Shown piece after piece: positions 48,221 to 64,000 of a stretch of 64,000 nt of DNA (position 1 is the first letter of the stretch; each line of letters starts with the position of its first letter). The notes under the pieces are model-generated. The model was not told the DNA's origin. It saw nothing but the letters and a program-made list of their open reading frames with translations, and did not search any database. The translations under genes were made by a program, and so were the position numbers. The stretch lies in contig NW_018408821.1 in assembly GCF_002113885.1 (NCBI RefSeq), forward strand, positions 1,238,135 to 1,302,134, read 5' to 3'. Origin of the DNA: Mizuhopecten yessoensis. Lineage: Eukaryota.

Positions 48221-50520
48221 GTATAACAACAAAGTTTGATTGTACGATAAATGTTTATATTACATAATACAGGCTATTTCCGTGCAATATTGCCGTTCAA
48301 TAAAACGATATAGCACACGTACAATAAACATGCAAATGAGTCTTGTCACCGTGGGAAACAGGTCATATTCTTACGCACTACAACTTCTTCGTTTGTAAAC
48401 AAAATGGCTGACCGAGCACTGGGAGATTAAAATTTACAAACGAGTTTAATAAATTCAATAGTATATACACACGAGTGTAAGCTTCACACAAATTCAACAC
48501 ATGCATGTTCTAATTCCAATTGAACTTCTCCGACATGCACACACTTGTAACCGGTCAACTTCATCAGTGTTCCAGCTTCATAGCGGATTCCACAGTATCT
48601 TTTCTGGCTCAGTGACAGGTGGAAACATCGAGGTTCACATTCACAAACAACCCTCTCCAATGGAATGCGCTTGTGTTATAGAGAGTGACAATCACTCCAG
48701 CCCCTTTAAACTTTTAAAAAATGCAGACTTCGATGTGTATTGTGATGACCTTTACCCTGACAGTGCACGCGCCGTTGTGCCAAATATGTGACGTCACTGC
48801 TATTTTCTTAAACGCCAATTCGTTGAATTGTTTTCGTATCAAAAATGAGTGTTAATGTTGTTATGATAATTATTAAAATATTGGTTGATGAAGAAAACAC
48901 ACATGATTGTTTGTTCATTGAAAAGGTTCTCGGGAAGAAGTTTCTGAAACTATTTTTGTGGCGCAGCGAGCTCCAAACAAAATCCATGTAATGTGTCCTT
49001 TCGTCAGCCATCGGTACAATTTATATAGAGGAGACGTGTCAAGAAAAAGAGTTAATGTCATAAGCATGGGTATTGTCAAAAACATCAGTTTTAATTTATT
49101 AAACAAATATATATAACAATATTGTTGCCAGTAGGCTGTTGAATTCTTTCATTTTGATAAAACGTATATCTTTCACACCGTTACATGTATCAGAATGACA
49201 CTACAGCTGTAAAGATGCAAATTAAGCGACGATACAATAGACGGTTGCTTTGGTTCATCTTTGTGACGTACACCAAGTCGTTTAGTTAAATCCATAACTG
49301 ATATAATTTTAGTTCGTATATCTTTCTGATTAACAGAAGAATACGGTAGAAACGTTTTGAATAGTCAATTATAAAATGGAGCGCATCCTTGTTGTTATCA
49401 TGACGACATTATTTAAGTGCGCAAAAAAAGTTCTTTTCGCTCTTTTTCATTTTATGTCTTTATTTGGCAAAAATGCAATCCAATATTACATGCCATAGTC
49501 CTAAACTATTAAATATTAAGGAAAAGACATTTAAATACCGTCTGTGGTGTATATCATGTATACCCCTCAGGCTTTTTCATGAAGTTCACAAGGACTAGCT
49601 AGGTCAGGGACGGCTGTGAAACGTCAGCGTCTCTTATATTGAGTTATGCATATACACTGAGAACATAATAGACACATAATCATTAAATGTAATACATTGG
49701 AATGCAGGAGGCCTAAAACCCGAAATTCCGGAATCCAACGTCCCTCGGATGCATTACGTGTTTCACCAATCGACAGGACGTCATTGACCAGATTCACACA
49801 CTAAATATTTCTAATAAACCTACAGGCTCTGACACGATGCACCTTATCATTGGATGGAGCACACCAAGATTGTTTGAAGGGACTCAAGAGTCTGTTTTCT
49901 TTGATTTTTTATTTGTGATCAAACACGAGATTTCATTGGTCGTAATAGTTTGCGACTGTATAATCACGTTTTCACTTGCGTATAAGGCCCAGATGGTGAG
50001 TGTTTCAATTGACACCAATGACCCCAACTGACCCCGACAAATCATGAAATTGCTGACTAATAAATCCATGTTAATGACGTCACCATTCCACCTCAGAGTA
50101 GGTATATATTTATAGATATAACGGATAGGTTAACCTGTAACACATATTGCCTGGAGGGACGTGATCACCGGACCCTGCACACCTGACCAGCACAGGTGTA
50201 GTATTTCTCACTTTACCTGTCACCGTTATCTGAGGACATCGTCCCCATCACCGCGTGGCGGTTATGGTCTCGTTAACGGGGAAACGTCAAAATGGTAAGT
50301 TTTGGGGATACACAGGGAGGGTTAGACTGGCCACCGTCTCTAGAATATTGAACAATCAAGAAAACAACTTTAACTCTAAAAAAAACATGATCACTTGGAT
50401 GTCTCATTCTAGAATAGAAAAGATATTTCGACCCACGTGCGACATGTGTGTGAAAGTGACGATTTGTTTTTAAAATATCAGTTTAATATGGTGACTCATT
50501 TGTGCCATTTCGTTATTTCG

Positions 50521-50779
50521 CCCAAGGGGTGTATAGTTTTGTATTGAAACTTTGTATAGCCTTTTCGAGGCGAAAAGACGAGATGACGACAATTTAGATA
50601 CAAATATAATGTCGCTATTTTGCCCCGAAATAACGAGATTTTAAATTATAGAATGTCGTTGTTTCGTTATTTCGCGGCGAAATAACGACATTATATTTGT
50701 ATCTAAATTGTCGTCGTCTCGTCTTTTCGCCTCAAAAAGGCTATACAAAGTTTCAATACAAAACTATACACCCCTTGGG
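50521..50779. mobile_element. Foldback MITE, ~116-bp arms
   Basis: CCCAAGGGGTGTATAGTTTTGTATTGAAACTTTGTATAGCC... is mirrored by ...GGCTATACAAAGTTTCAATACAAAACTATACACCCCTTGGG with few mismatches and a short spacer. Confidence 0.9.
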
Positions 50780-51565
50780 ATAACCCTGTGATGTATTACG
50801 CCTCAGGACTATGGCTATTACATAGGCAGTCGCAATAGTGCCGAAAACTGCATGATATTTTTCTTATGATTCAGCAAGTAGTCTGGAAGATAAACTTGAC
50901 AGTTATAACTTATGTTGATTATTGTATGAACATATATATATATATAAATATATATTGCCACCCTTTCTGTCTCTTACATACGCTCTTCTGATTCAGTATA
51001 ACCTATATAGGCGACATGTGACGCAATAAGTATGTAGGTTTCTTTTATTTACCATGTTTTTATGTCTCTCATTGCGATATGTACATTTTCTATGTTAATG
51101 CTATTCCAATCAATGGTTTCAATTTTCAATTTTGTTTGAAACATTATCTTTTTAACCATTGTTTGGATAATGCACATGGTTATTGATATAGCGTTTCTAC
51201 CACGCTTATTGTAGTGATTCTTCTTCTGTTATTCTTTAAAATCTTTTAATTTTCATTTCGATTGCGTTGACACAGTACTTCTGCTTTTCGTGTTTAGGGT
51301 AGGCAATCTTGTGCCCATCTTCCTATATCAATCCAGTTTTTAATCATGAAACCCAGTCTCATTGAAACTTTATTAATTCCAACAAAATCAATGTTTTGTT
51401 CCAGTTTTTTGGAGAATAATGAATATCAATTTTTTATAAGGAGAAGATTAACAAAATTCAAATTTTTAACTTTTTGTTTCCCTTTTTGGAGTCAAGAGAA
51501 TGTTTCGATTCATCTATATAACAAACTTTCAAGTGTGATACCAAATTAGGTATGAATGAGGAATT

Positions 51566-52154
51566 TACGATGGCCGATAACAGCCGACACGAAACAACTA
51601 CATTATAAGACATTTATGTACATGTACACTATTTAAAAACTGTACATGTACACAAAACAACAACAATATAAGACATTTCTGTACATGTACACTATTTAAA
51701 AACTGTACATGTACACAAAATAACAACAATATAAGACATTTATATACATGAATATTAATTAAAAACTGTACATGTACCCAAAACAACTACAATATAAGAC
51801 ATTTATGTACATGTACACTATTTAAAAACTATACATGTACACAAAACAACAACAATATAAGACATTTATATACATGAATATTAATTAAAAACTGTACATG
51901 TACACAAAACAACTACGATATAAGACATGTATGTACATGAACACTATCTAAAAACTGTACATGTAAACAATACAACTACAAGTGCTATTTACATTCCTTA
52001 ACGGTTCGTGTCAACTTGATATTTCACACGTGCCTGATACGGCGGTTAATAAACGACAAGGAAATAACTAAATTTCCCAGCAAAAAAACAGTGTACATGC
52101 ATATACATATCTTATATTGTAGTTGTTTTGTGTCGGCTGCTTTCGGCCATCGTA
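51566..52154. mobile_element. TIR element carrying an internal 63-bp tandem array
   Basis: ~60-bp imperfect TIRs (TACGATGGCCGA..CAGCCGACAC.AAACAACTACA and TGTAGTTGTTTTGTGTCGGCTGCTTTCGGCCATCGTA). About 6 tandem 63-bp units at 51595-51980. Confidence 0.85.
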
Positions 52155-53213
52155 GGAATGAAATGCATAGCAAATTCAACAATACGTTGTATCATAGTTA
52201 TTGCATCTGAAAAAATCGAAAAATAAATATCAATATCAATGTCAAAGCCAAACAAAGTAAAGATGTTGCTGCATTACATAGCCATTTCGTCAATTAAGGT
52301 TCATCAGTGGGACGCCAGGTCAACTTCAGATATATTTTTCCAAATCAAGTAGTTCTCCCCTACGATTTTTATATCATATGATACATATCAAATACAGCGG
52401 TCATAATACATATGTAGTCGTGTATGCTTTTGTATGATGTGCGCGTGTGTAAAACTAAACGCAGGCATACACACATAGGGAGATATTGGCCAGGTGGTAA
52501 AGGACTAGTAGTTAGCGCCTGATACAGACAGCTCCTGCGATTTCCTCCAAAACTATATTGATTTATGTACATGTATATGCTAATTGTATTGATTGTATTG
52601 GTTGTATATCTATGTACTGTAAAGCTCCTTACAGCTATTTGGCCTATTTTAACTACATGTAGATAGGGTGGTACATTTGTTTATCAAATGTTGTGTATTA
52701 GTATTGTATTTTTCATTATAAAAAAAATATATATGCTTTTTACGTGGAACACAATTTTTATGTTCAACATCGCTCATTAGATTAAACTAATGTTATTCGA
52801 TTGATTGGTTGATGATGACGAATTAATTCATCACTATTGCAAAGGGCTTATTAATTTCATCCTGGAATTATGCTGAAATGATGATTAGGAAAACTAAAAA
52901 GACAAGAAGTCCTTCGGAAGCCTTCAGCATAATCATACGTGAACATAAACGTTTTGTAAAAATAAATCTCGTTTTCTAAAAACAAACTTTTTCAGTTTGG
53001 TATATTGATAGGTTAATATTGGACGCCTGCGTGACTGTTTCATGTAGAACATATCGCCTGCAGTATAAATAAAGCCTTACTGGCAAGGTGTTTTCCATTG
53101 TAATTTTAATAACGAAATACTCCAAATATGGTCGACAAAAGACTTTCTAGTACCAATACATTCTTCTTGATTTGTTTTGTCGTTTCCATGTGATGATGTA
53201 ACACTAAATGGGG

Positions 53214-53335
53214 TAGTCCGAATTATTCTGACGTTTTATCGACTTTTTTCATATCGGTCTGTCGTCGATTAACGACGTTAATGGACGACAGACCGATATG
53301 AAAAAGTCGATAAAACGTCAGAATAATTCGGACTA
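53214..53335. mobile_element. 122-bp palindromic MITE with 9-bp TSD (AcademH-like or Mutator-like)
   Basis: TAGTCCGAATTATTC...GAATAATTCGGACTA, flanked by TAAATGGGG at 53205-53213 and 53336-53344. Confidence 0.9.
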
Positions 53336-53349
53336 TAAATGGGGCTACC

Positions 53350-53412
53350 GGTTGGTTGGGTTGGGTGCATAGGGTTTAACGTCCTATAAACAGCAAAGAT
53401 CATTTAAAGAGA
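53350..53412 (-). mobile_element. SINE 3' tail fragment
   Basis: GTTTAACGTCCTATAAACAGCAAAGATCATTTAAAGA is the reverse complement of the shared SINE tail. Confidence 0.6.
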
Positions 53413-54989
53413 TGGGTTTGGTTTAGCACGTACATATTTCTATAATTTATGCAAAGACAAACCTTATTGCCCGAGCATTACATATTAAGATTGATCCCAA
53501 CTTGGCTCTAATTGACACCTCATACAAAAATGTGCAAGAAATCGCTCTTTCATTTTGTAAATAACCTTGGCGCAGTTATAAGGCATCATATAGTCGACAA
53601 TACTGACAAGACCAATGCTGAACCGTGCCAAGTCATCAAACTGCTCGGCTCGACCGATTCTAAGTTCACACTGTTAAAGGTTAAGCAACGAGGTCTAAAA
53701 AACTTATTTATCAAACATTATTTATAAAAAGCTGAAGGCCGGAACTAGTAAAGAAGTGATATCACAAAACGCCCGTTAACTTTTGACCGGAAACAACTGC
53801 CGGAAAAGTGTCACACAAACCCTAATATTCCTATAGGGGGAAAAGGCCCACTGCATTTGGTTCATAAGGTCAAGGAAAGAGTCCATGACAAGCGCTGACA
53901 TCTTGTGGTTGCAGGGAAATATCTTAACTAGGCGCTGTCAAATGTAAACTCTGGATTTTTTTTTGTAAACTCAGCATTTTATAAAAACAATATTTCAACT
54001 ATTTCGATTGTCTTATTATTTATACTCCCATCAATTTTTTCCTACGAATGAGTTAATCCCTTCTCAGGAATACAAATATCGTTAGTGAAATCTAGTTAGA
54101 GTGCTTTGGATACGTGTAACATATATACCTAATGCGTTACTATAACGATTAGCTTAAAAAGTTATTTCTGATATGAAACTGCTCTTACGTATCTATATTC
54201 TATATTCCTTCTTACACCGTGATCGTGATAAACATTTATTTAATTGACCTGTATATTACACTATTTACCAGACCGCTTAGTTTATATGTTAAAAAGACGT
54301 GTTTTTATACAAATAATGCTTATTAAAGTTACGTTATTATTATGTAAACAATGAATTCTATAGAGATTATAGCGGTAACGTCATATTCTATAAATTATTA
54401 TAAATTAATGTCATAATAAAATTACTCGATTTTATAAGAAATATATGTTGCTGGTTTATTTTAAATATACCTACCAACGTTATCTGACAAACTGTAACAA
54501 TATGCCAGAAATCTAGCAGTTGTAAGTCCAATATCAGATATACTTGCTAATTTCTCATGTGTTTTCAATTTTCTTTTCGTATCGTGTAAGGTTTCACTAT
54601 TGTACAATTCAATTTATTACCAAATGCACATTGCATATAGGCGTACAGAAATATACATATAGATAAATACTTTACAAATAGCTTGTACAATGGCGGTGAA
54701 CATATGCAATAGATTCAATTCCATACATAAGCATTACAAATTTATGAAATAGTCATAAGTTGGGGAAAAAAATAAGGTTTTCCTAAGGTAACTTAGCGGA
54801 CTCTTGTGAAGCATAATTTAGTTGTTTATGATAAAGCCTTAATCTAACCAAATTTCTAGGAAATAACAAAACTTCAAAGTCAATCATACATCCTCAACAT
54901 GAAGATAGAACGAGTACTATATATTATATAATGAAATGAGATTATACTCATTGTGAAGTAAAAGACATAGATCTCAATCGCATTATACA

Positions 54990-57817
54990 GTAACAAAACG
55001 TTTATTTCATGATATTTGACTTCTCTTAACAGTTGCTTGAATCAAGTACTTACTTAAATTTCTAATAAGTGTAAAAAAAATGCTAGCCAGTAGCTCTATT
55101 AATTTAAACACAGAAGGACGAATACGATAATATGGCTTGATATACGATACTCTTAATTCTAAAGAAACTCATCCTCGACATCTCCAAGATCACATAAAGT
55201 ACACAATCTCTGGTTTCAAGGCACTGCATTATATCTACCTGTCTCTATATTAAGGTTATGTGCTTGCAATCTATATTTCGCAAGAATACATTTATTTTTT
55301 CTAAAAAGCGGTTTTGTAAAATACCATTGTATATCAAAACGGTCAACAATGTGTTTATACAACAAACATTTTGAAGATGTTTTGAATATGTTTCCCATTT
55401 CCTGAATAAAAGTATAAATTCTACGCTGTATATGCAAAGGGTAACGACCAAGTTCAAAATATACCATGGCATTATTTACTGTTTTCCTGACACCCAATAA
55501 GGTTTTCAAAAATAATAAATGTATATTTTCAATCTGCGGTGCAGGACTATAACCCCATACTTCACACCCGTAATTTACAATACATGATATATAAGTATCA
55601 AATAAAGATAACTTGGTCTTTTCATTCAACAAAAATATTTTCGCTTTCCGATTAAGAAGAAAATAAGCTTTCCTTCCTTGTACAGCAATGTTATTCAATG
55701 TAATGGTAAATTTACCATTATAATTAAAAACCAAACCTAAATAGCAAAATTGATCTACCACTTCTATAGCTTAACATCAAAAATCCACTGCTCGTTTGGA
55801 TACAATCGTTTACTTTTCCTAAAACCAATTATTTTTGTTTTGTCTACATTTACAGATAAATTCCAACGTCGAGAATAAGTGATTAAAAAATCCAACATAT
55901 TTTGGAGGTCAACAACATACCCAGAAAAAAACACCGTGTCATCGGCATACATGATTAAAAACAAATTAAGTAATTGCAAGTGATAACTTTGGTAATTTGA
56001 CTTAATCAATTCGAATTCCATGTCGTTGACAAATAAAGAAAACATTATTGGAGATAAAGATTCTCCTTGTAATAATCCGACCTGTAAGTCGTACATAGGA
56101 GATAATTAACCATGAAACTTTCCACATGACTCTCGTATATAGATTAATTTCCACAATTTGCACCACAATTGATTAAGTGATATACTATCAAACGCTTTTC
56201 TATAGTCTACGAAAACAAAATAAAGCTTTTTATAACTCTGTAACGTTTTAGTAATCAAGGTATTAAGTACAAAAAATGTATCTCTGGTACCACTCCCGGG
56301 CTTAAAACCAAACTGAGCATATGTAATTACATTCTCGCTTTCGCTCCACTTTAACATTCGTTTAAGAGTGATGTAAATAACTTGGCCATATGACTTACTA
56401 ACGTGATTCCCCTATAATCATTTACGTCGTTTTTATCACCTTTTTATGCAGAGGTATAACAACTCCTTCTGATCAAGCTTAAGGAAAGTGTCCTACCTGT
56501 AATATAGTATTAAACAATTGTTGGAAAACTGGTGCAATAACATCAATACACTCAATAAAATATTCATTAATGACATTGTCTAAACCGGCGGATTTACCTT
56601 TGGATGACCCTTTCATTGAAACTAAAAATTCATCAAGACTGAAATCGTCATCAAGCTTAGGGTAAATACATTCGTTATCAACTTCAACTTGCTCAACATT
56701 GACGGGAGAAAAGTCAACTGAATTGTTGGCAATATCTTTAAAATATTGGTAAAAATAATTTAAAACCAGATTTCTGAAATCACAAGTCTTACGTCTAGAA
56801 AAATTACTTTAAAGAAAATTTGGGATCATTTTTTCTCAAAATGTCTTACATATCGCCTTCATTCCAAAGAAAAGATCTCTTCACCCTCCCTTCGTAGGTC
56901 CTGTATTTCTTCTTTTCACAAACCAAGTTTTCTCTATTGCTAACAGTTCTACATATATTAAAAGATCTTAAAGCGTTTCTATATATTCTACGTAAACGTT
57001 TACATTCGTTATCAAACCATGGTTTGTCAGGTTCCTTGACATTACGTCTCGACTTCTGATGACAAGAACAATTACAAGTACGTATACGTTTCTCGAAGCA
57101 GCAAGACTTGTCAAAAATAGAGTGAACATTGTTAACCAGTACTTCCAAACATTTGTCAATACTGTCCGTAGTATTCTCTAAGGTATTCAATGAATTTGCA
57201 ATTAATGCCCTGTTTGCATTCATAGAATCAGCAGTATTTACTCTTATTTCTTCTGTCCAGTACACAGACTTAGTAGTACTAAACATATTACTGAAGTCAC
57301 AACAATTACAAATATGAGTGTCTGCTTTTAAGGTGAAAAACAATGGCGCGTGGTCAGAATATTCATTAAAATCACAAATATTACAATTTTGAACCTGGTC
57401 CAAATAATGGCCATGAGCCAGTACATAATCAATTGTACTTGTACCTAAGGCGTTATAAAACGTAAATTTACCTTCGATATCACCAGTCGTCCGACCATTT
57501 AATATTCGAAAACCAGTAGTCTTACACATTTGCAAAAGACGACGCCCAAATTGGTTAACAAAAACATCTTCAGAATTACGAACACTTTCACCAACTTCAT
57601 CCTCATAGGGTATCACATTATCTATAACCTGATGTAAACTATCATGTAGAACATCAAATGGAATAAAGTCAGGCTCTCTACCAGTTCTACTTTTGAGATC
57701 ACCAGTGATAAATACGTGACCCACACAGCTGAATTTGGCAATTCCAATTTCCAATACATCAAACATATTGACATCATAACTATCATACATAAAATGTTGC
57801 CCTTTCTCATACAACAC
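54990..57817 (-). mobile_element. Decayed, 5'-truncated LINE ORF2 (APE endonuclease + RT), RTE-X-like (tentative)
   Basis: Endonuclease motifs GDLKSRTG, ILNGR, STIDY, SDHAP and linker PWFDNEC. RT motifs QFGF, FVDYRKAFDS, GLLQGESLSP, YADD. C-terminal ELGRYPL and LNIETGRY. Split by frameshifts and stops. Confidence 0.93.
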
Positions 57818-59317
57818 CTTCCTTCTTTAGTTTACTGTATATGATGAGATGTTTTAATGACATTTTGTAGATCACCTTGGAACCATTACTGGAAAACCAT
57901 GGAATACTCGGACAATCTGATAAAACATGTCTCGTGTGTTTTTACGCATTGCAAGAATGTGTTATATAGGGGGGAAACAGTAAGTCAAGAAATTGCTCGA
58001 TAGTTTCAACCATATAATAAAACTTTACGATACTGCATTTTACCATTTTATCACAAACACTGCGGTTTTCTGTTCTTGTTCATCTTATCATGGAGTGTAC
58101 ATGTGCTGTGGTATTGAAGGGACTACTAATTTCCAGAAAATCAATATTAAATCTTGATAGATATTCCCCACAAAACCCGAACCTACCTTTCATTATAACT
58201 TCACTTACCAAAACGCTTTGATTCCATCTGGTCAATACGTAGGGAAATAGTCAAATGCAAAAACAAACAAAAAGTTGATCAAGTTAATAAACGATATACC
58301 TTCTTAATGCCTCCAAAAAATTTCAAACCTTTTCAAATTTTAAACTCTTTACGATTATTTTCGTAAGTATAGCCGGGCAGTAGTGATATTTTAACAACAG
58401 TCAGTATATAAAGTTATGACAGTTTCTGCTGTCTAGAGTTTTGTGCGAGTTACGCCCCCTTACATCCCTATTTGAGTAAACGTATTTTATTGTAATTTTG
58501 TCATGCTAGAGAAGAAAACTTTGCAACCTTGCCCAGATTATCATGTCCTGATTTTGAAATAAGTATAACATCTCTACTACACTAATAAATACATAATGAA
58601 ACTAATAACGTGAGGCAATATGTATCTGATGCTGTCAGTAAGCGTATAAAATAACCTAAATACCGTACCGAATGAACTAAGATTCGTATCGTCTAAAAAA
58701 ATACATTGTAGATAAACAAAATCCCTGAGAAAGAAAAACGACAAAATAAAACTTTACTATTTAAGTGAATGCATCACATGTATTTGTGAAGCTTTTAATA
58801 CGATTTCAGTCACTGTCATTAATTCAGCGTCAGCACACTTCAAAGTTGTAGCGACATAAACCTTTCAGAATTGCTTACTGGCGAAATACTAACAGTATTT
58901 TGAACACAAATGATGTAACGCTAGGGAGTCAGTTTATTTCAAATAGCTGTAAAAACTCTGAATGACAGGTGTTTGGAGTACTACATATGTTTAGATAACG
59001 AAAAACATACATACCACAGTAATAGTTTGCATATCTGCAACGTTAACGTCCTGCGATATGTGTGGTATAACCTATTATCACATGGTAAGAAATAATTATT
59101 TATAAATAGAACTTGCCATATGATATAAATATAAATAAGAATAAAGGAAGTAAATCTTAACCTTTAGAAAAATAATCAAAAATGTACATCATGAAAACGA
59201 ATCATTAAATATATATTTCATTATCTACATCATGAACAAAAAATATATAGTATATGATTGACGCATTGGATAAGTCAGAAAAGAAGTTAATGTAATATTT
59301 ATCAGACCATTTGTCAA

Positions 59318-59323
59318 TATAAA
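59318..59323 (+). promoter_or_regulatory. Candidate TATA box of the secreted-protein gene
   Basis: TATAAA 78 bp upstream of the proposed ATG at 59396. Confidence 0.4.
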
Positions 59324-59395
59324 TGACAAAACATATGTTCATAATAATTGCAAACAGCAACACCTTTTCATATTGAATTACCGTATAATTAATAA

Positions 59396-59414
59396 ATGGT
59401 CTCCTGCTCTCAGT
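59396..59414 (+). CDS. Secreted Tyr/Lys-rich protein, exon 1 (MVSCSQ+1 nt)
   Basis: ATG GTC TCC TGC TCT CAG T|GTAAGA. The phase-1 donor matches exon 2 and completes a signal peptide. Confidence 0.65.
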
Positions 59415-59600
59415 GTAAGACAGTGTTCAATATTCCAATCAATATTATTCCGAAACTGATATCTATTTTTGCGGATTAACATTTTTTTCATGGTTTTTTT
59501 ATTATGATTTGTTTTTATTTAATTGGGGTTTTTTTGGGGGGGGGGGGGGGGTTCAGGAAAACAGAGTTCTTATTTAAAATTGTCTCTTTGTCTTTTTCAG

Positions 59601-60050
59601 CATGGCTGGCATTATTTTGTTTCGCTCTGTTAAGCTTCTGCTCATGTCAACAGCCAATTGTGTTTTCTTCTGGTCAAACCAATGCTTATTCTCCATATAA
59701 TGCAAGAGCCACGCAATATTCTTTACATAACAGTAAACCCAATAATTGGAAACGATATGGCAGTATACCAACTAGAGGTAAATACTATGGAAGCACGCAA
59801 ACTCAAAGCAAATACTATGGAAGCATGCAAACTCAAAGTAAATACTATGGAAACATGCAAACCCAAAGCAAATTCAAAAGAGGCAATTCTGTGAAGAAGT
59901 GGGGATCTTCATATTCTGCACAGAGTCAACAGCTAAATAACTATAAAGGATTTGTTAAACCGAAGGTGCTGTACAAGTCAGAAACTCTAAAGACAAAGCC
60001 ATACTCCTATAGACTTAGATCCGTTGGCAGAACTTTAATCGACCAATATC
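59601..60050 (+). CDS. Secreted Tyr/Lys-rich protein, exon 2 (signal peptide core + basic KYYG-repeat region)
   Basis: TCTTTTTCAG| acceptor, 450 nt open, |GTAAGT donor, phase 1-1. Hydrophobic WLALFCFALLSFCSC and in-frame 30-bp repeats at 59750-59869. Confidence 0.85.
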
Positions 60051-60413
60051 GTAAGTAGTCTATCAGCTTCACAAGGAAATAAGGTATTCTGGCATTTATA
60101 TAGATTCAACTTAAATCAAATTTTGCGTTTTTTTTTTTTTTTACAAGGTTTGTATTTTTTATCAAACAATGTTTATACTACGAATTATTTAACTTTCTAT
60201 AGTAGAGATTTATAAATGAAATGAAAGATATCATAATAAGAATTACATTTACATTTTTAAATCGTTTCAAAGCTTATTCTTAAAATTATATTTTTTAAGA
60301 ATATATGCGTGTGATCCTGCATTTCCTGCAAGATGCAGAATATCTTGATCAAAATGTTAGAACACCTTTCACACTCTCTCTCTCCGTGTCATATGGTTCA
60401 TTGTTTGTTTTAG

Positions 60414-60542
60414 TTCAAAACTACATGCCCTGGGACACGTGCACGGCGATGGTGACAAACACCATCAATACATTGTTTAATCCAACGTCCGATTTTATGA
60501 ACATCTTCATCAATGCTGGGGTTGACAACTGGTGCGGAAATA
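60414..60542 (+). CDS. Secreted Tyr/Lys-rich protein, exon 3
   Basis: TTGTTTGTTTTAG| acceptor, 129 nt open (LQNYMPWDTC...GVDNWCGN), |GTAAGT donor, phase 1-1. Confidence 0.8.
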
Positions 60543-60797
60543 GTAAGTACTTTGTGTAGTTCAGAAGGCATTGGATCCACATTTTTATAAATACATATTA
60601 ATAAATCTAAGTAATAAATCAATAAATTAAGTACATAGATAAATAAATAGTTTTTACAGATGTCTGTGAATATTTCCAAATATCTGTCATACCGAAATTA
60701 TTTTATAATTGACACTTATGGTGTATCAAATCCATTTTTATATTTTGGTATCCATGATTAAAATATATTTACTGACACTTTCTTCATTTTATTTCAG

Positions 60798-60877
60798 AAT
60801 TGTACGCTCTTCTCCAGCCAGTAATTTCCCCTTATACAGACAGGCTATTCGAGAACCTGGATCTTGCAAGGGATTAA
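60798..60877 (+). CDS. Secreted Tyr/Lys-rich protein, exon 4 (KLYALLQPVISPYTDRLFENLDLARD*)
   Basis: TTTTATTTCAG| acceptor. The phase-1 frame is open to TAA at 60875-60877. Confidence 0.72.
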
Positions 60878-61606
60878 AAGCGATTTTCATTTCTAACCGG
60901 AAATTATTAAACTTGACACTGGAAAATTAATGTGGTACATGTTCTCTATATATAACACATGCGTATTTACCATGGCTTTAATGGTATTTGAGCAACTGAC
61001 CAGAAGTGTTACTTTTTCTTGACAACAAGTGAGATTAATAACAGTATCTATGCGTAATTTTGGAGTCATTTTTAGCCTGGCTCATTGTAAATCGATTTTA
61101 AATGGCAATTATTATTATATTTTGATATTATTCCCGACAAGTGATTGGCCAGGTGTGCATCACGTGTTCACCGATAAAAAAAACCGATATTGACTTGGAG
61201 CGCGTGATTTCTGTTGAAGGACTGTGTGTTTCTAAAAATAGAATTATGACGTGTCTCCAAACAATGCACCGTCCCACTTTCGAAGCATTTTTGTTGTGGA
61301 ATTTTTCAGATTGCTTACATTACTGTTTTGTAAAATAATTAAACAATTGTAGCCTCTAACTTAGGTTAATACATCTTTTCTCGGGTTTATAAATCCAGGT
61401 ATCGACCTCAGCCAAAGGCTATAATTGAGTTACGTCTTTATATTTAGCACTTTGAAGGGATTTGACATTTTCATTAGTTAATTTTGGACGTTTTAACTCC
61501 CTTTCGGTTTATGTGTGTGGCTGCTGGAGTGAGTTCTCCACGTCACGAATAAACATGACTCGAGGAATGAACTTAATGCATAAAATGGATAGGAGTACTA
61601 TTGCAA

Positions 61607-61970
61607 TGACTTTTCCTAAAGAAGGTGAATTAAAAAATCTTGATTTTCCTACAGAAACTGAATGAAGGGTCTGTGTTCCCCGACAGAGAAATAATGTAGG
61701 ATCTTGGATTTTGTAATCAGAGTGAATGTATAAACGGGATGTAATATTTTGGTTTCGCTATATAAGTGAATGTAGGGTCTATATTTTCTACAGGAAAGGA
61801 AAGAAAAATCTTGATTTCTCTGCAGAAGCGGGATATAGGATCTGGGTTTCCTTATGAAAAGAAAATATAGGATGTTATTTTCCCAGCAGGAAGTGAATTT
61901 AATACAAGGAATACCTAAAGAAAATGAATGTAGGATCATGGTTTCCCAATAGAACCTGAAGGTTTGATCA
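61607..61970. repeat. Highly degenerate ~32-bp minisatellite
   Basis: About 11 units resembling TGATTTTCCTACAGAAAGTGAATGTAGGATCT. Confidence 0.65.
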
Positions 61971-64000
61971 GGATTTCGATATGGAATGCTTGCATGTGTT
62001 TCATGTGTACCTATTTTTCCATCGAAAAGTAAATGTGTATGATTGATGCGATTGTTTTCTATATAACGTAACTGTATGTGGCTGATTTGACGAAACAGTT
62101 CCCTACGTATATTGTATTTATATGGTTGTTGTGATGGGGGTTCACAAATTATATGAACATTTGTAGTTGTAGAGATTAGTTTTAGGTCATTCAGTGTACA
62201 TTCGTGACTGTTTTGATAGAAGTCCCTAAAGTAAATAAGTAGGTGCCGACAAAATGAGTTTTCCTCTGGAACATTGAAGTCTTCTGTCCAACACAAATAA
62301 TCCACAACACCTCAGATATCAGGATTCAATCTGTTGTATCCAAAAACAGAACAATGTATACAATGGTTTAACCTGTTTTACAGTGCGATTAATATAAACA
62401 CTATTTCATTTGAGGATTAACACTAAAATAATCTTTACACGAAACAAATAGATTCAAAGATCTTACAGTATCATGATGACAATAATCGGAATTTGACAAA
62501 TAACAGTACATATAGAAACACAACACAGAAAGAGCACAAAAGACATTGAACTATTTATTATCAATTATTTTTTAATCTTCCATAAAAAACGTGTAGAACA
62601 ACTCAATAAAGTAAAGCGTCAGAGGAACTAGGAGATTATTTAATAAATCTGCAAATTTACAATCGCAATCACTTCTTATGGTGTTGTAGTGATGTATCTA
62701 ATGTTAATTGTTAATATTAATCTAAATATAGGGATACTTTGTGCAAATTGTATGATTTTCGAGTTAAAAATAATTTATCACAAATATTATGAGTTTTGTA
62801 AATACGACGAATCAATTTACTAATAATACTGCTACTATGATAATGTAGTCACGTAAACATTAAACGGACATATCTTATTTCGTTACACTGTGGTATGTGA
62901 TATCTGACATTATTCCAGTCTTTTTACATATAGTGTTTCCTAGAATACCATAATATCTTAATTGACGTTACTTTCTATAGCAAGAATAGTGCATGTGTTT
63001 GTAGATGCAACAAAACCCCACTTCTTCAAAAGAAGCTTTACACACGATTTATCTTCATGTATCTAAACGAACAAAAACATCTTATAGATATAGGTCATCG
63101 CACAAACACCGGACTTACCATCAATAAATAATGTCCAATAGAGCATATGCTGGAAAATGTTTTATGTTTTTGATATGCGTTGAATATCACAAGCTTACTT
63201 CAAATTATGCAATTTATACATCGAGTGATAGTAAGCAAAACAAGATATATACATATACTTCCTTCAATAATAAATATCAATATGAATATAATGTATCTTA
63301 TAAAAAAAAAGACAAGAACTAAATAAAATAGCAACATTCATGGCAAATGTGAAACTACTGTGATATGATTTGATATTCCGACGGTATTTATTTGAAGTTT
63401 AACTTACGGATGGTATTAACCGGAATAAATGAGATTGGGTATGATGTTTATGTATTTGTTAATAAATAATTTGCTTATTGACACCGTTTTTTGTTTTGTT
63501 TTTCTGATTATTTATTTTTTAATCAAAAAGGTATGTCATTCAAGAACAACACGAAATCGACGACAGGCAGGGAGGACCATGATAACTTCGTTTCCTAATA
63601 GTCTGTGTTAGTATAGGTTACTGGTTAGTGCTGTTTAACCTTACAAGGGATTCTAATCATTTTGGTAATCGTTCACTATATTTGAGCGTCCATTATTTGC
63701 GGAAATCTGAATATTTAATTCATACCCTTTTTGGATCGGAAAGGATTACAAACTTTGATAAAATAATTGCAAGAAACTAAATGTCATGTCTTGGTCAGTT
63801 AAAATCTTTCACAGTTGGAATTCAAGCTATTATCCCGGGAAGATATCGAGGTTCAAACTCCGTCTATCCATGAGGCAATCGACAATCTGAGCAAGGAATG
63901 AAGACTGTTACGTGTAAAGTTGTCCATTACATATTCTTATCTGGTAATTTGATAAATTTTGGAAGACGAATGTCATCTGAATAATGACACATAAAATAAC

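What the first reader, a model, noticed from the sequence alone, without database searches (positions are those of the whole stretch)
59396..60877. Hidden 4-exon gene for an unrecognised secreted, highly cationic Tyr/Lys decapeptide-repeat protein
Seen in the sequence: four exons (59396-59414, 59601-60050, 60414-60542, 60798-60877) with canonical GT-AG sites, all introns phase 1, splice into one 225-aa ORF. It has a signal peptide, then an exon-2 region with 16 Tyr and 22 Lys/Arg but only 2 acidic residues. That region contains KRYGSIPTRG-KYYGSTQTQS-KYYGSMQTQS-KYYGNMQTQS. A short, more acidic C-terminal domain carries two Cys. Established: adjacent Tyr (as DOPA) and Lys in decapeptide repeats is the chemistry of mussel foot adhesives, and basic Tyr/Gly-rich secreted proteins occur in shell and periostracum matrices. 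Inference: a lineage-specific byssal, adhesive or shell-matrix protein. I recognise no family for it.
Basis: partly seen in the sequence, partly recalled or inferred. Interest (0 to 1): 0.8.

Follow-up and report, generated by a model that had tools for sequence, protein, structure and literature searches.

The report
Annotated scallop orphan secreted protein gene

Summary
The window is Mizuhopecten yessoensis. They translate cleanly. An RNA run covers them, with no depth in most of introns 2 and 3, and spliced reads confirm the 60050>60414 junction.

The gene is not hidden. It is GenBank KP79_PYT04294 (144 aa, truncated) and RefSeq LOC110464420 (XP_021375302.1, 229 aa, "uncharacterized").

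- It has no RNA depth.
- It lies in a single-copy 603-bp segment that is deleted in the haplotype that is expressed.
- Mini-exons of this kind are expected by chance in this intron.

RefSeq's exon 1 (50264-50294, 9.3 kb upstream) uses the same acceptor. Its sequence and its donor site are conserved upstream of the only relative I found, an uncharacterized 198-aa protein of Argopecten irradians.

That relative shares the signal-peptide end and a helical C-terminal domain of about 95 aa with two Cys. It lacks the KYYG repeats. Those repeats are a young 30-bp x 3.2 expansion, and they vary between alleles (KYYGN becomes EYYES).

I found no Pfam family, no solved relative and no usable fold. The tissue of expression is unknown, so a byssal or shell-matrix role stays an untested guess. 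This is an ordinary lineage-restricted secreted orphan gene of modest interest.

The parts
50149..50263 (+). Conserved upstream block, probably core promoter plus 5' UTR of exon 1. The transcription start was not mapped.
   Evidence: It aligns to Argopecten L006:7592-7739, 2.3 kb upstream of that gene's ATG exon (69% over 156 nt, E 2e-5).
50264..50294 (+). Coding part of the RefSeq exon 1: MVSLTGKRQN plus the first base of an Ala codon, phase 1, donor G|GTAAGT.
   Evidence: The N-terminus of P0002 (XP_021375302.1) maps here. The donor GGTAAGTTT is conserved in Argopecten.
50295..59600 (+). Intron 1 (9.3 kb). It holds a broken non-LTR retrotransposon (55216-57817, minus strand) and the 603-bp indel.
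   Evidence: RVT_1 E 1e-13.
58950..59552 (.). Single-copy 603-bp segment, present in the reference and absent from other haplotypes.
   Evidence: DNA contigs of X17 and X19 join 58949 to 59553 with one G between them. The segment has one copy in the genome and no terminal repeats.
59396..59414 (+).
   Evidence: RNA depth is 0. It lies in the deleted segment. Chance expectation is 2.7 such mini-exons in this intron. The RefSeq model does not use it.
59601..60050 (+). Exon 2: signal-peptide core (WLALFCFALLSFCSC|QQP), the basic disordered Tyr/Lys/Gln/Ser/Thr-rich region, and the start of the conserved C-terminal domain (LKTKPYSYRLRSVGRT).
   Evidence: (RNA depth about 6-15).
59778..59873 (+). 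30-bp tandem repeat, 3.2 copies, encoding KYYGSTQTQS / KYYGSMQTQS / KYYGNMQTQS.
   Evidence: score 157, 90% matches. It is absent from the Argopecten ortholog. The alleles differ by T>M, K>E, G>E, N>S and a neighbouring S>N.
60414..60542 (+). Exon 3: the conserved helical domain with both conserved Cys (MPWDTC...LFNPTS...GVDNWC).
   Evidence: junction 60050>60414 in 4 RNA reads plus 1 contig; intron position and phase conserved in Argopecten.
60798..60877 (+). Exon 4, coding part, ending in the stop codon TAA. The 3' UTR runs on to about 60990.
   Evidence: (RNA depth up to bin 60901-60987).

Best explanation
This is the already annotated, uncharacterized gene LOC110464420 (KP79_PYT04294) of the Yesso scallop Mizuhopecten yessoensis. 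It has four coding exons: 50264-50294, 59601-60050, 60414-60542 and 60798-60877, all joined in phase 1. The product is 229 aa.

Shown or read from the sequence: the protein starts with a signal peptide that has a positively charged n-region, a hydrophobic core and a CSC|Q cleavage motif. The cleavage motif is conserved in the ortholog. The mature protein would be about 23.5 kDa with pI 9.8. It has two parts. The first is a disordered, basic N-terminal tail of about 110 aa with no acidic residues, rich in Tyr, Lys, Gln, Ser and Thr. This tail evolves fast and holds a young 30-bp x 3.2 repeat expansion. The second is a conserved, acidic, mostly helical C-terminal domain of about 95 aa with two conserved Cys.

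The family is known only from scallops; the one relative is in Argopecten irradians.

Inferred, at about 0.3: the protein is exported, and the C-terminal domain is the functional core. The cationic Tyr-rich tail would act as a sticky, variable appendage that binds anionic or aromatic partners in an extracellular matrix secreted by mantle or foot.
For: Species and annotation.
Exons and reading frame.
Transcription and splicing. RNA run X23 has depth on exons 2-4 and none in most of introns 2 and 3. The junction 60050>60414 is seen in X23 and in X20.
Exon 1 of RefSeq. The block and its donor site are conserved in Argopecten, upstream and on the same strand.
Ortholog and conserved domain.
Same intron positions and phases in Argopecten.
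Composition, pI and predicted secondary structure.
Repeat.
Single copy in its own genome.
A conserved neighbour gene encodes another secreted Tyr-rich low-complexity protein.
Against: The exon 1 to exon 2 junction (50294>59601) was not seen in reads; only one read-laying run was allowed and it did not reach 50 kb. The conservation of exon 1 rests on a single 156-nt match at E 2e-5.
The function has no direct support. The tissue of the RNA run is unknown, and the level is low (roughly 40 reads in 12 million).
No fold could be predicted (pLDDT 35 and 45).
The tail looks close to neutral within the species: 11 of 13 exon-2 differences between two haplotypes change the protein.
The signal peptide was judged by eye and by hydropathy, not with SignalP.
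Confidence: 0.8

Rival explanations
1. One reading: a four-exon, 225-aa gene whose first exon is 59396-59414, encoding a byssal or adhesive protein that works by DOPA/Lys decapeptide chemistry, as mussel foot protein 1 does.
For: The ATG, frame and GTAAGA donor are there, and a TATAAAT lies about 70 nt upstream. The tail has 11.8% Tyr, pI 10.2 and no acidic residue. Tyr-rich proteins are among the main byssal components of the scallop Chlamys farreri (PMC9168380).
Against: There is no RNA depth on 59335-59421. The exon lies in a 603-bp segment missing from the haplotype that is transcribed. Mini-exons of this kind occur at chance frequency. RefSeq uses another exon whose donor is conserved across genera.
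There are only 3.2 repeat copies. They are absent in Argopecten. The third copy is EYYES in the expressed allele. No sequence relation to any mussel protein was found. Adult Yesso scallops make no byssus (PMC5700196).
Confidence: 0.05
2. A mantle-secretome protein, meaning a shell-matrix or periostracum component. The basic Tyr/Gly/Ser/Gln-rich tail would be a framework or cross-linkable region, and the Cys-bearing domain would anchor it.
For: Lineage-restricted, fast-evolving, repetitive, low-complexity secreted proteins are typical of mollusc mantle secretomes (established knowledge). The gene 10.6 kb downstream encodes a secreted Asn/Tyr/Gly/His-rich repeat protein, and that pairing is conserved in Argopecten.
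Against: There is no expression or proteome evidence. No similarity to any named shell-matrix protein was found. No mention was found in the papers searched or in the supplementary text searched. The supplementary files of the Pecten maximus shell-proteome paper are not held. Neighbourhood is weak evidence.
Confidence: 0.25
3. A secreted soluble factor, for example a cationic immune or antimicrobial effector, or a prohormone cut at its basic sites (WKR, KFKR, VKK), rather than a structural material.
For: It is small, secreted and strongly cationic. It has several dibasic sites. It has a conserved compact C-terminal domain with two Cys. It shows high non-synonymous polymorphism, as many immune genes do. 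The RNA level is low to moderate in an unselected run.
Against: The decapeptide repeats are not flanked by dibasic sites. The dibasic sites are not at conserved positions in Argopecten. It does not appear in the Yesso scallop neuropeptide survey's supplementary text. No antimicrobial family matched.
Confidence: 0.15
4. A transcribed locus of little or no function, drifting towards loss. The tail would be neutral sequence, and the protein might not be made.
For: 11 of 13 exon-2 haplotype differences are non-synonymous. Exon 2 is as polymorphic as the introns or more so (2.9% against 1.2-1.9%). The RNA level is low.
Against: The frame is open in both alleles. Exon 3 has no difference at all. The C-terminal domain is 46% identical, with both Cys, the signal-peptide end and all intron positions kept between two scallop genera. 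That pattern requires purifying selection.
Confidence: 0.07

Closest known systems
XP_069122613.1, uncharacterized protein of Argopecten irradians (P0003)
   Same: It is the only detectable relative (E 2e-24; 39% identity overall, 46% in the C-terminal domain). It shares the signal peptide ending CSC|Q, the block LKTKPxxYRxRSVGRT...LFNPTS...GVDNxC with two Cys, the intron positions and phases, the upstream first exon with its donor, and the downstream neighbour gene.
   Different: It has no KYYG decapeptide repeats; that region holds an acidic NDKDNDDDK stretch instead. Its start codon lies in the large exon and its first exon is non-coding, whereas in Mizuhopecten the ATG sits in exon 1. It has 198 aa against 229, and pI 9.0 against 9.7 for the full-length precursors (about 9.8 for the mature Mizuhopecten protein).
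Mussel foot protein 1 (Mefp-1/mfp-1), and the Mefp1-like Tyr-rich byssal protein CF53671.1 of Chlamys farreri (PMC9168380)
   Same: It is secreted and strongly basic. It has Tyr next to Lys in a ten-residue period.
   Different: It has 3.2 repeat copies, against 12 in CF53671.1 (PMC9168380) and, from my own knowledge, dozens in mfp-1. It has no Pro or Hyp in the repeat and no sequence similarity. A conserved helical Cys domain makes up 40% of the protein. DOPA content, foot expression and presence in byssus are all unknown.
Basic Tyr/Gly-rich shell framework proteins of pearl oysters (KRMP, shematrin, prismalin-14); comparison from my own knowledge, not tested
   Same: They are small, secreted, Lys-rich proteins with Tyr-rich low-complexity stretches, and they are restricted to one lineage.
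   Different: No sequence similarity was detected in any search. Gly content is much lower (about 6%). No shell proteome evidence exists.

Membership tests
mfp-1-type DOPA/Lys decapeptide adhesive | Long tandem array of decapeptide repeats (tens of copies) | tested here: not met
   TRF finds 3.2 copies of a 30-bp unit, plus one degenerate copy upstream.
mfp-1-type DOPA/Lys decapeptide adhesive | High Tyr and Lys content with pI near 10 | tested here: met
   The tail (residues 27-136) has 11.8% Tyr, 17 Lys/Arg, 0 Asp/Glu and pI 10.2. The mature protein has pI 9.8.
mfp-1-type DOPA/Lys decapeptide adhesive | Sequence relation to known foot proteins | tested here: not met
   No mussel or other adhesive protein appeared among the hits. 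Pfam was blank.
mfp-1-type DOPA/Lys decapeptide adhesive | Repeat motif conserved in orthologs and alleles | tested here: not met
   The repeats are absent in Argopecten. The third repeat reads EYYES in the expressed allele.
mfp-1-type DOPA/Lys decapeptide adhesive | Tyr converted to DOPA; foot-gland expression; presence in byssus | not testable with these tools
   The tissue of RNA run X23 is not given and no proteome data are at hand. Adult Yesso scallops make no byssus (PMC5700196).
Classical secreted protein | N-terminal signal peptide with charged n-region, hydrophobic core and small residues at -3 and -1 | tested here: met
   P0002 residues 1-26: K7 and R8, core WLALFCFALLSF (hydropathy 2.2-2.6), then C-S-C before Q27. 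The same CSC|Q is in Argopecten. This was judged by eye; SignalP was not available.
Pectinid orphan family (LOC110464420 / XP_069122613.1) | Conserved C-terminal two-Cys helical domain, shared intron positions and shared synteny | tested here: met
Mollusc shell-matrix protein | Identified in a shell proteome, or mantle-specific expression | not testable with these tools
   No Yesso scallop shell proteome was reachable. The supplementary files of PMC5854119 are not held.
Neuropeptide precursor | Repeated peptides flanked by dibasic cleavage sites at conserved positions | tested here: not met
   The repeats are bounded by single Lys residues. The dibasic sites are not conserved in Argopecten. 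It is not in the supplementary text of the scallop neuropeptide survey.

The most novel reading that the evidence does not exclude
A scallop-only secreted protein family has a previously undescribed two-Cys helical domain. In the Yesso scallop its disordered tail has very recently grown a Tyr/Lys decapeptide array out of a 30-bp minisatellite. That would be an adhesive-like or matrix-like repeat caught at birth, still polymorphic in charge between alleles. It is accompanied by a move of the start codon from exon 2 into the formerly non-coding exon 1.
Probability: 0.25. Interest if true: 0.45.

Novelty: new member of a known kind. Interest (0 to 1): 0.25.

Why it matters
If the protein proved to be a matrix or adhesive component, it would add a scallop-specific building block. 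It would also be a tidy example of how repetitive, sticky, low-complexity tails arise and vary on a conserved secreted domain. As things stand, the value is mostly in annotation. It defines a two-member orphan family with a conserved two-Cys domain. It also documents a start-codon relocation and a 603-bp intronic indel. None of this would surprise a specialist, because molluscan genomes hold thousands of such lineage-restricted secreted genes.

Tried and rejected
- Pfam on each exon and on both full proteins gave only sub-threshold noise.
- Word-index protein searches with exon 2, with P0001 and with the two-sequence profile found only the gene itself and the Argopecten protein.
- The exhaustive HMMER search added one more hit, a pseudoscorpion kinase-like protein (P0004, E 2e-10). 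I rejected it. The match is 51 residues at 36 bits and was counted three times because the protein is a triple repeat.
- PDB sequence search: nothing.
- ESM Atlas: no feature hit. The structure rows are generic helical hairpins on a model with pLDDT 0.46.
- AlphaFold2 on the full protein and on the C-terminal domain gave pLDDT 35 and 45. I therefore ran no fold search, since the matches would have been meaningless.
- Paralogs in the same genome: none for exon 3. The exon-2 hit on C2580 is a long 30-bp minisatellite, open on both strands, and probably non-coding. The third hit (L003, E 0.008) was not followed.
- The 603-bp segment as a transposon: rejected, because it is single copy and has no terminal repeats.
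- Literature: no paper names the locus, its accessions or its motifs. Supplementary text of the C. farreri genome paper and of the scallop neuropeptide paper holds no matching sequence. The supplements of the byssus secretome paper and of the shell proteome paper are not held.
- Exact look-ups of the RefSeq protein on contigs and of the neighbour ORF in the protein clusters found nothing.
The exons were searched one by one by reference, and the joined protein was represented only by the database entries P0001 and P0002.
- In one search a script tried splice-site combinations in the Argopecten locus. It printed only the coordinates that reproduce the database protein P0003.

Full report
**What is in the sequence**

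59396-59414 reads ATG GTC TCC TGC TCT CAG T followed by GTAAGA. 59601-60050 follows a polypyrimidine tract and an AG. 60414-60542 and 60798-60877 likewise have AG before and GT after.

In frame they give MVSCSQ, a 149-aa stretch, a 42-aa stretch and a 25-aa stretch that ends in a stop. The lengths 19+450+129+80 = 678 put every junction in phase 1.

It holds KRYGSIPTRG-KYYGSTQTQS-KYYGSMQTQS-KYYGNMQTQS. At DNA level the last three decapeptides are a 30-bp tandem repeat of 3.2 copies with 90% matches, so the expansion is young.

**Where the window comes from, and whether the gene is hidden**

The window is contig C5494:1238135-1302134 of a 988-Mb assembly. The word-index search with exon 2 returned a protein of Mizuhopecten yessoensis.

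That protein, OWF39962.1 (KP79_PYT04294, 144 aa), starts at a Met inside the repeats. Its 90% cluster also holds the RefSeq model XP_021375302.1, "uncharacterized protein LOC110464420", 229 aa.

So the gene is annotated twice. It is uncharacterized, but it is not hidden.

**Transcription**

One read-laying run was allowed.

- RNA run X23 (raw reads) gives depth of about 6-15 on exon 2 and about 2-4 on exons 3 and 4 and the 3' UTR, out to about 60990.
- The same run gives zero depth at 60205-60378 and 60553-60726, inside introns 2 and 3.
- The junction 60050>60414 (GT..AG) is seen in four X23 reads and in one contig of X20, a second study that is probably RNA.
- The 60542>60798 junction was not listed, because depth there is too low. 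Both public models use it, and Argopecten has the same intron position and phase.
- The level is low, roughly 40 reads among 12.4 million, and the tissue is not given.

**Exon 1**

Four results speak against 59396-59414.

1. RNA depth in 59335-59421 is zero, although the first bin of exon 2 already has depth of about 8.6.
2. DNA contigs of two other runs (X17, X19) join 58949 to 59553 with a single G between, so they lack 58950-59552. The X23 RNA reads all carry the SNPs linked to that deletion (59609 A, 59632 T and others). The segment is single copy and has no terminal repeats, so it is an ordinary indel and not a mobile element.
3. The RefSeq protein begins MVSLTGKRQN-A, not MVSCSQ-S. This maps to 50264-50294 with the donor G|GTAAGT, also phase 1, joined to the same acceptor at 59601.
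4. In the 9.3 kb between the two, shuffled sequence gives 2.7 +/- 1.8 ATG..GTRAG phase-1 mini-exons, and two are present.

Independent support for the RefSeq exon comes from the bay scallop. Window 50149-50302 aligns to Argopecten L006:7592-7739, on the same strand and 2.3 kb upstream of that gene's ATG exon. The match is 69% over 156 nt (E 2e-5), while the other non-coding stretches compared do not align. The block CCCAyCACCGCGTGGCGGT and the donor TCAAAAyGGTAAGTTT are conserved.

In Argopecten this exon has no ATG at the matching place (GTGAGGGT against GTTATGGT). There the start codon lies in the large exon, just after an acceptor. In Mizuhopecten the large exon has no in-frame ATG before the hydrophobic core.

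The start codon has therefore changed exon between the two genera. I could not see the 50294>59601 junction in reads, and this remains the main gap.

**The protein**

P0002 has a charged n-region (K7, R8), a hydrophobic core W12-F23 and C-S-C before Gln27. This was judged by eye and hydropathy, because no SignalP was available.

The mature chain of 203 aa would be 23.5 kDa with pI 9.8 and 9.4% Tyr. Residues 27-136 have pI 10.2, 13 Tyr, 17 Lys/Arg and no acidic residue. Residues 137-229 have pI 5.2 and two Cys.

AlphaFold2 gave no usable model (pLDDT 35 for the whole protein, 45 for the C-terminal domain). Its secondary structure shows no regular structure for most of 26-136 and four to five helices in 145-223. 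I ran no fold search on such models.

**Relatives**

- Pfam is blank.
- The PDB sequence search is blank.
- The Atlas is blank by features.
- The exhaustive HMMER search of 1.84 billion representatives found one true relative, XP_069122613.1 of Argopecten irradians (198 aa, E 2e-24). It also found one artefact, a triple-repeat kinase-like protein whose single-copy match is only 36 bits.
- A profile of the two scallop proteins found nothing more.
- There is no paralog in the Yesso scallop genome.

The alignment shows what is conserved: the end of the signal peptide (CSCQ), a few Q/T/Y positions, and above all LKTKPxxYRxRSVGRTxxxQYxQxxMPxWxxC...TNxxNxLFNPTS...FxNxGVDNxCxN. That domain is 46% identical and keeps both Cys.

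Intron positions and phases are the same in both species. The KYYG repeats are missing in Argopecten, which has NDKDNDDDK in that region.

**Variation within the species**

Of 13 differences in exon 2 between the reference and the expressed haplotype, 11 change the protein. Exon 3 has none and exon 4 has one.

In the third repeat the expressed allele reads EYYES instead of KYYGN, and the first repeat has Met for Thr. Exon 2 differs by 2.9%, against 1.2-1.9% in introns 2 and 3.

The tail is therefore under weak or diversifying selection, while the C-terminal domain is constrained.

**Context**

Intron 1 carries a broken non-LTR retrotransposon on the minus strand (RVT_1, E 1e-13).

About 10.6 kb downstream, outside the window and on the same strand, lies a 257-aa ORF with a signal peptide, NPNSYN repeats and a Gly/Tyr/His-rich end. 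Its ortholog (67% identity, E 1.6e-71) lies 8.7 kb downstream of the Argopecten gene. Two secreted Tyr-rich low-complexity genes side by side in both genera is a mild hint of a shared secretory programme, and no more than that.

**Function**

Nothing tested here shows a byssal, adhesive or shell-matrix role. The composition fits. The following points weaken the mussel-glue analogy:

- the repeat number is 3.2;
- the repeats are absent from the ortholog;
- the repeat charge varies between alleles;
- there is no similarity to any foot protein;
- adult Yesso scallops do not make byssus (PMC5700196).

My best reading is a secreted protein whose conserved two-Cys helical domain is the working part and whose cationic Tyr-rich tail is a variable binding appendage. 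Its most probable setting is a mantle or juvenile-foot secretome (about 0.3 together). A soluble immune or signalling factor comes next (about 0.15).

Exons were searched one by one by reference, and the joined protein was represented only by the database entries P0001 and P0002.

**Verdict**

It is not hidden, its first exon was misplaced, and its function is open. This is an ordinary taxon-restricted secreted gene of low to moderate interest.

Noticed in passing
Outside the window: G000:C5494:1309669-1310442 (L007:1372-2145); Argopecten L006:22461-23447: The downstream neighbour on the same strand is a 257-aa ORF with a signal peptide, NPNSYN hexapeptide repeats and a Gly/Tyr/His-rich tail. 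Its ortholog (67% identity, E 1.6e-71) is the downstream neighbour of the Argopecten ortholog as well, so the pairing is conserved. It has no Pfam family, and the exact sequence is not in the protein collection.
   Followed up: partly
window 58950-59552: A single-copy 603-bp insertion/deletion polymorphism in intron 1. It ends at a G16 run and is absent from DNA contigs of two other runs. The 48 nt left before the exon-2 acceptor keep the polypyrimidine tract.
   Followed up: yes
window 50264-50294 and 59601; L006:7592-7739 and 10001: The start codon sits in exon 1 in Mizuhopecten but in the large second exon in Argopecten, whose homologous first exon has no ATG at that place. The start codon has changed exon between genera, while the donor site is conserved.
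   Followed up: partly
window 59601-60050: 11 of 13 differences between two haplotypes in exon 2 are non-synonymous, while exon 3 has none. The third decapeptide changes from KYYGN to EYYES in the allele seen in RNA.
   Followed up: yes
window 61075-61500: A very high-copy repeat just after the gene, with word depth in the thousands in DNA runs and in the hundreds to about 2,000 in run X20. Many opposite-strand joints around 61363-61407 suggest a palindromic or foldback element.
   Followed up: no
window 55216-57817, minus strand: A broken non-LTR retrotransposon inside intron 1. Its reading frames are split, and the 55767-56096 piece hits RVT_1 (E 1e-13).
   Followed up: partly
L002:1300-2100 (G000:C2580:376977-377321 region), minus strand: A long 30-bp minisatellite whose frames read K[IM]H[NH]SINTQG. 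It has the same period as the KYYGSMQTQS unit and is about 57% identical to it by hand alignment. It is open on both strands and decays into stop codons at its edges, so it is probably non-coding. A shared origin with the coding repeat is possible but unshown.
   Followed up: partly
window 61649-62305, minus strand: A 218-aa ORF with a recurring ILH/IPL pattern. It was not examined and may be repeat-derived.
   Followed up: no
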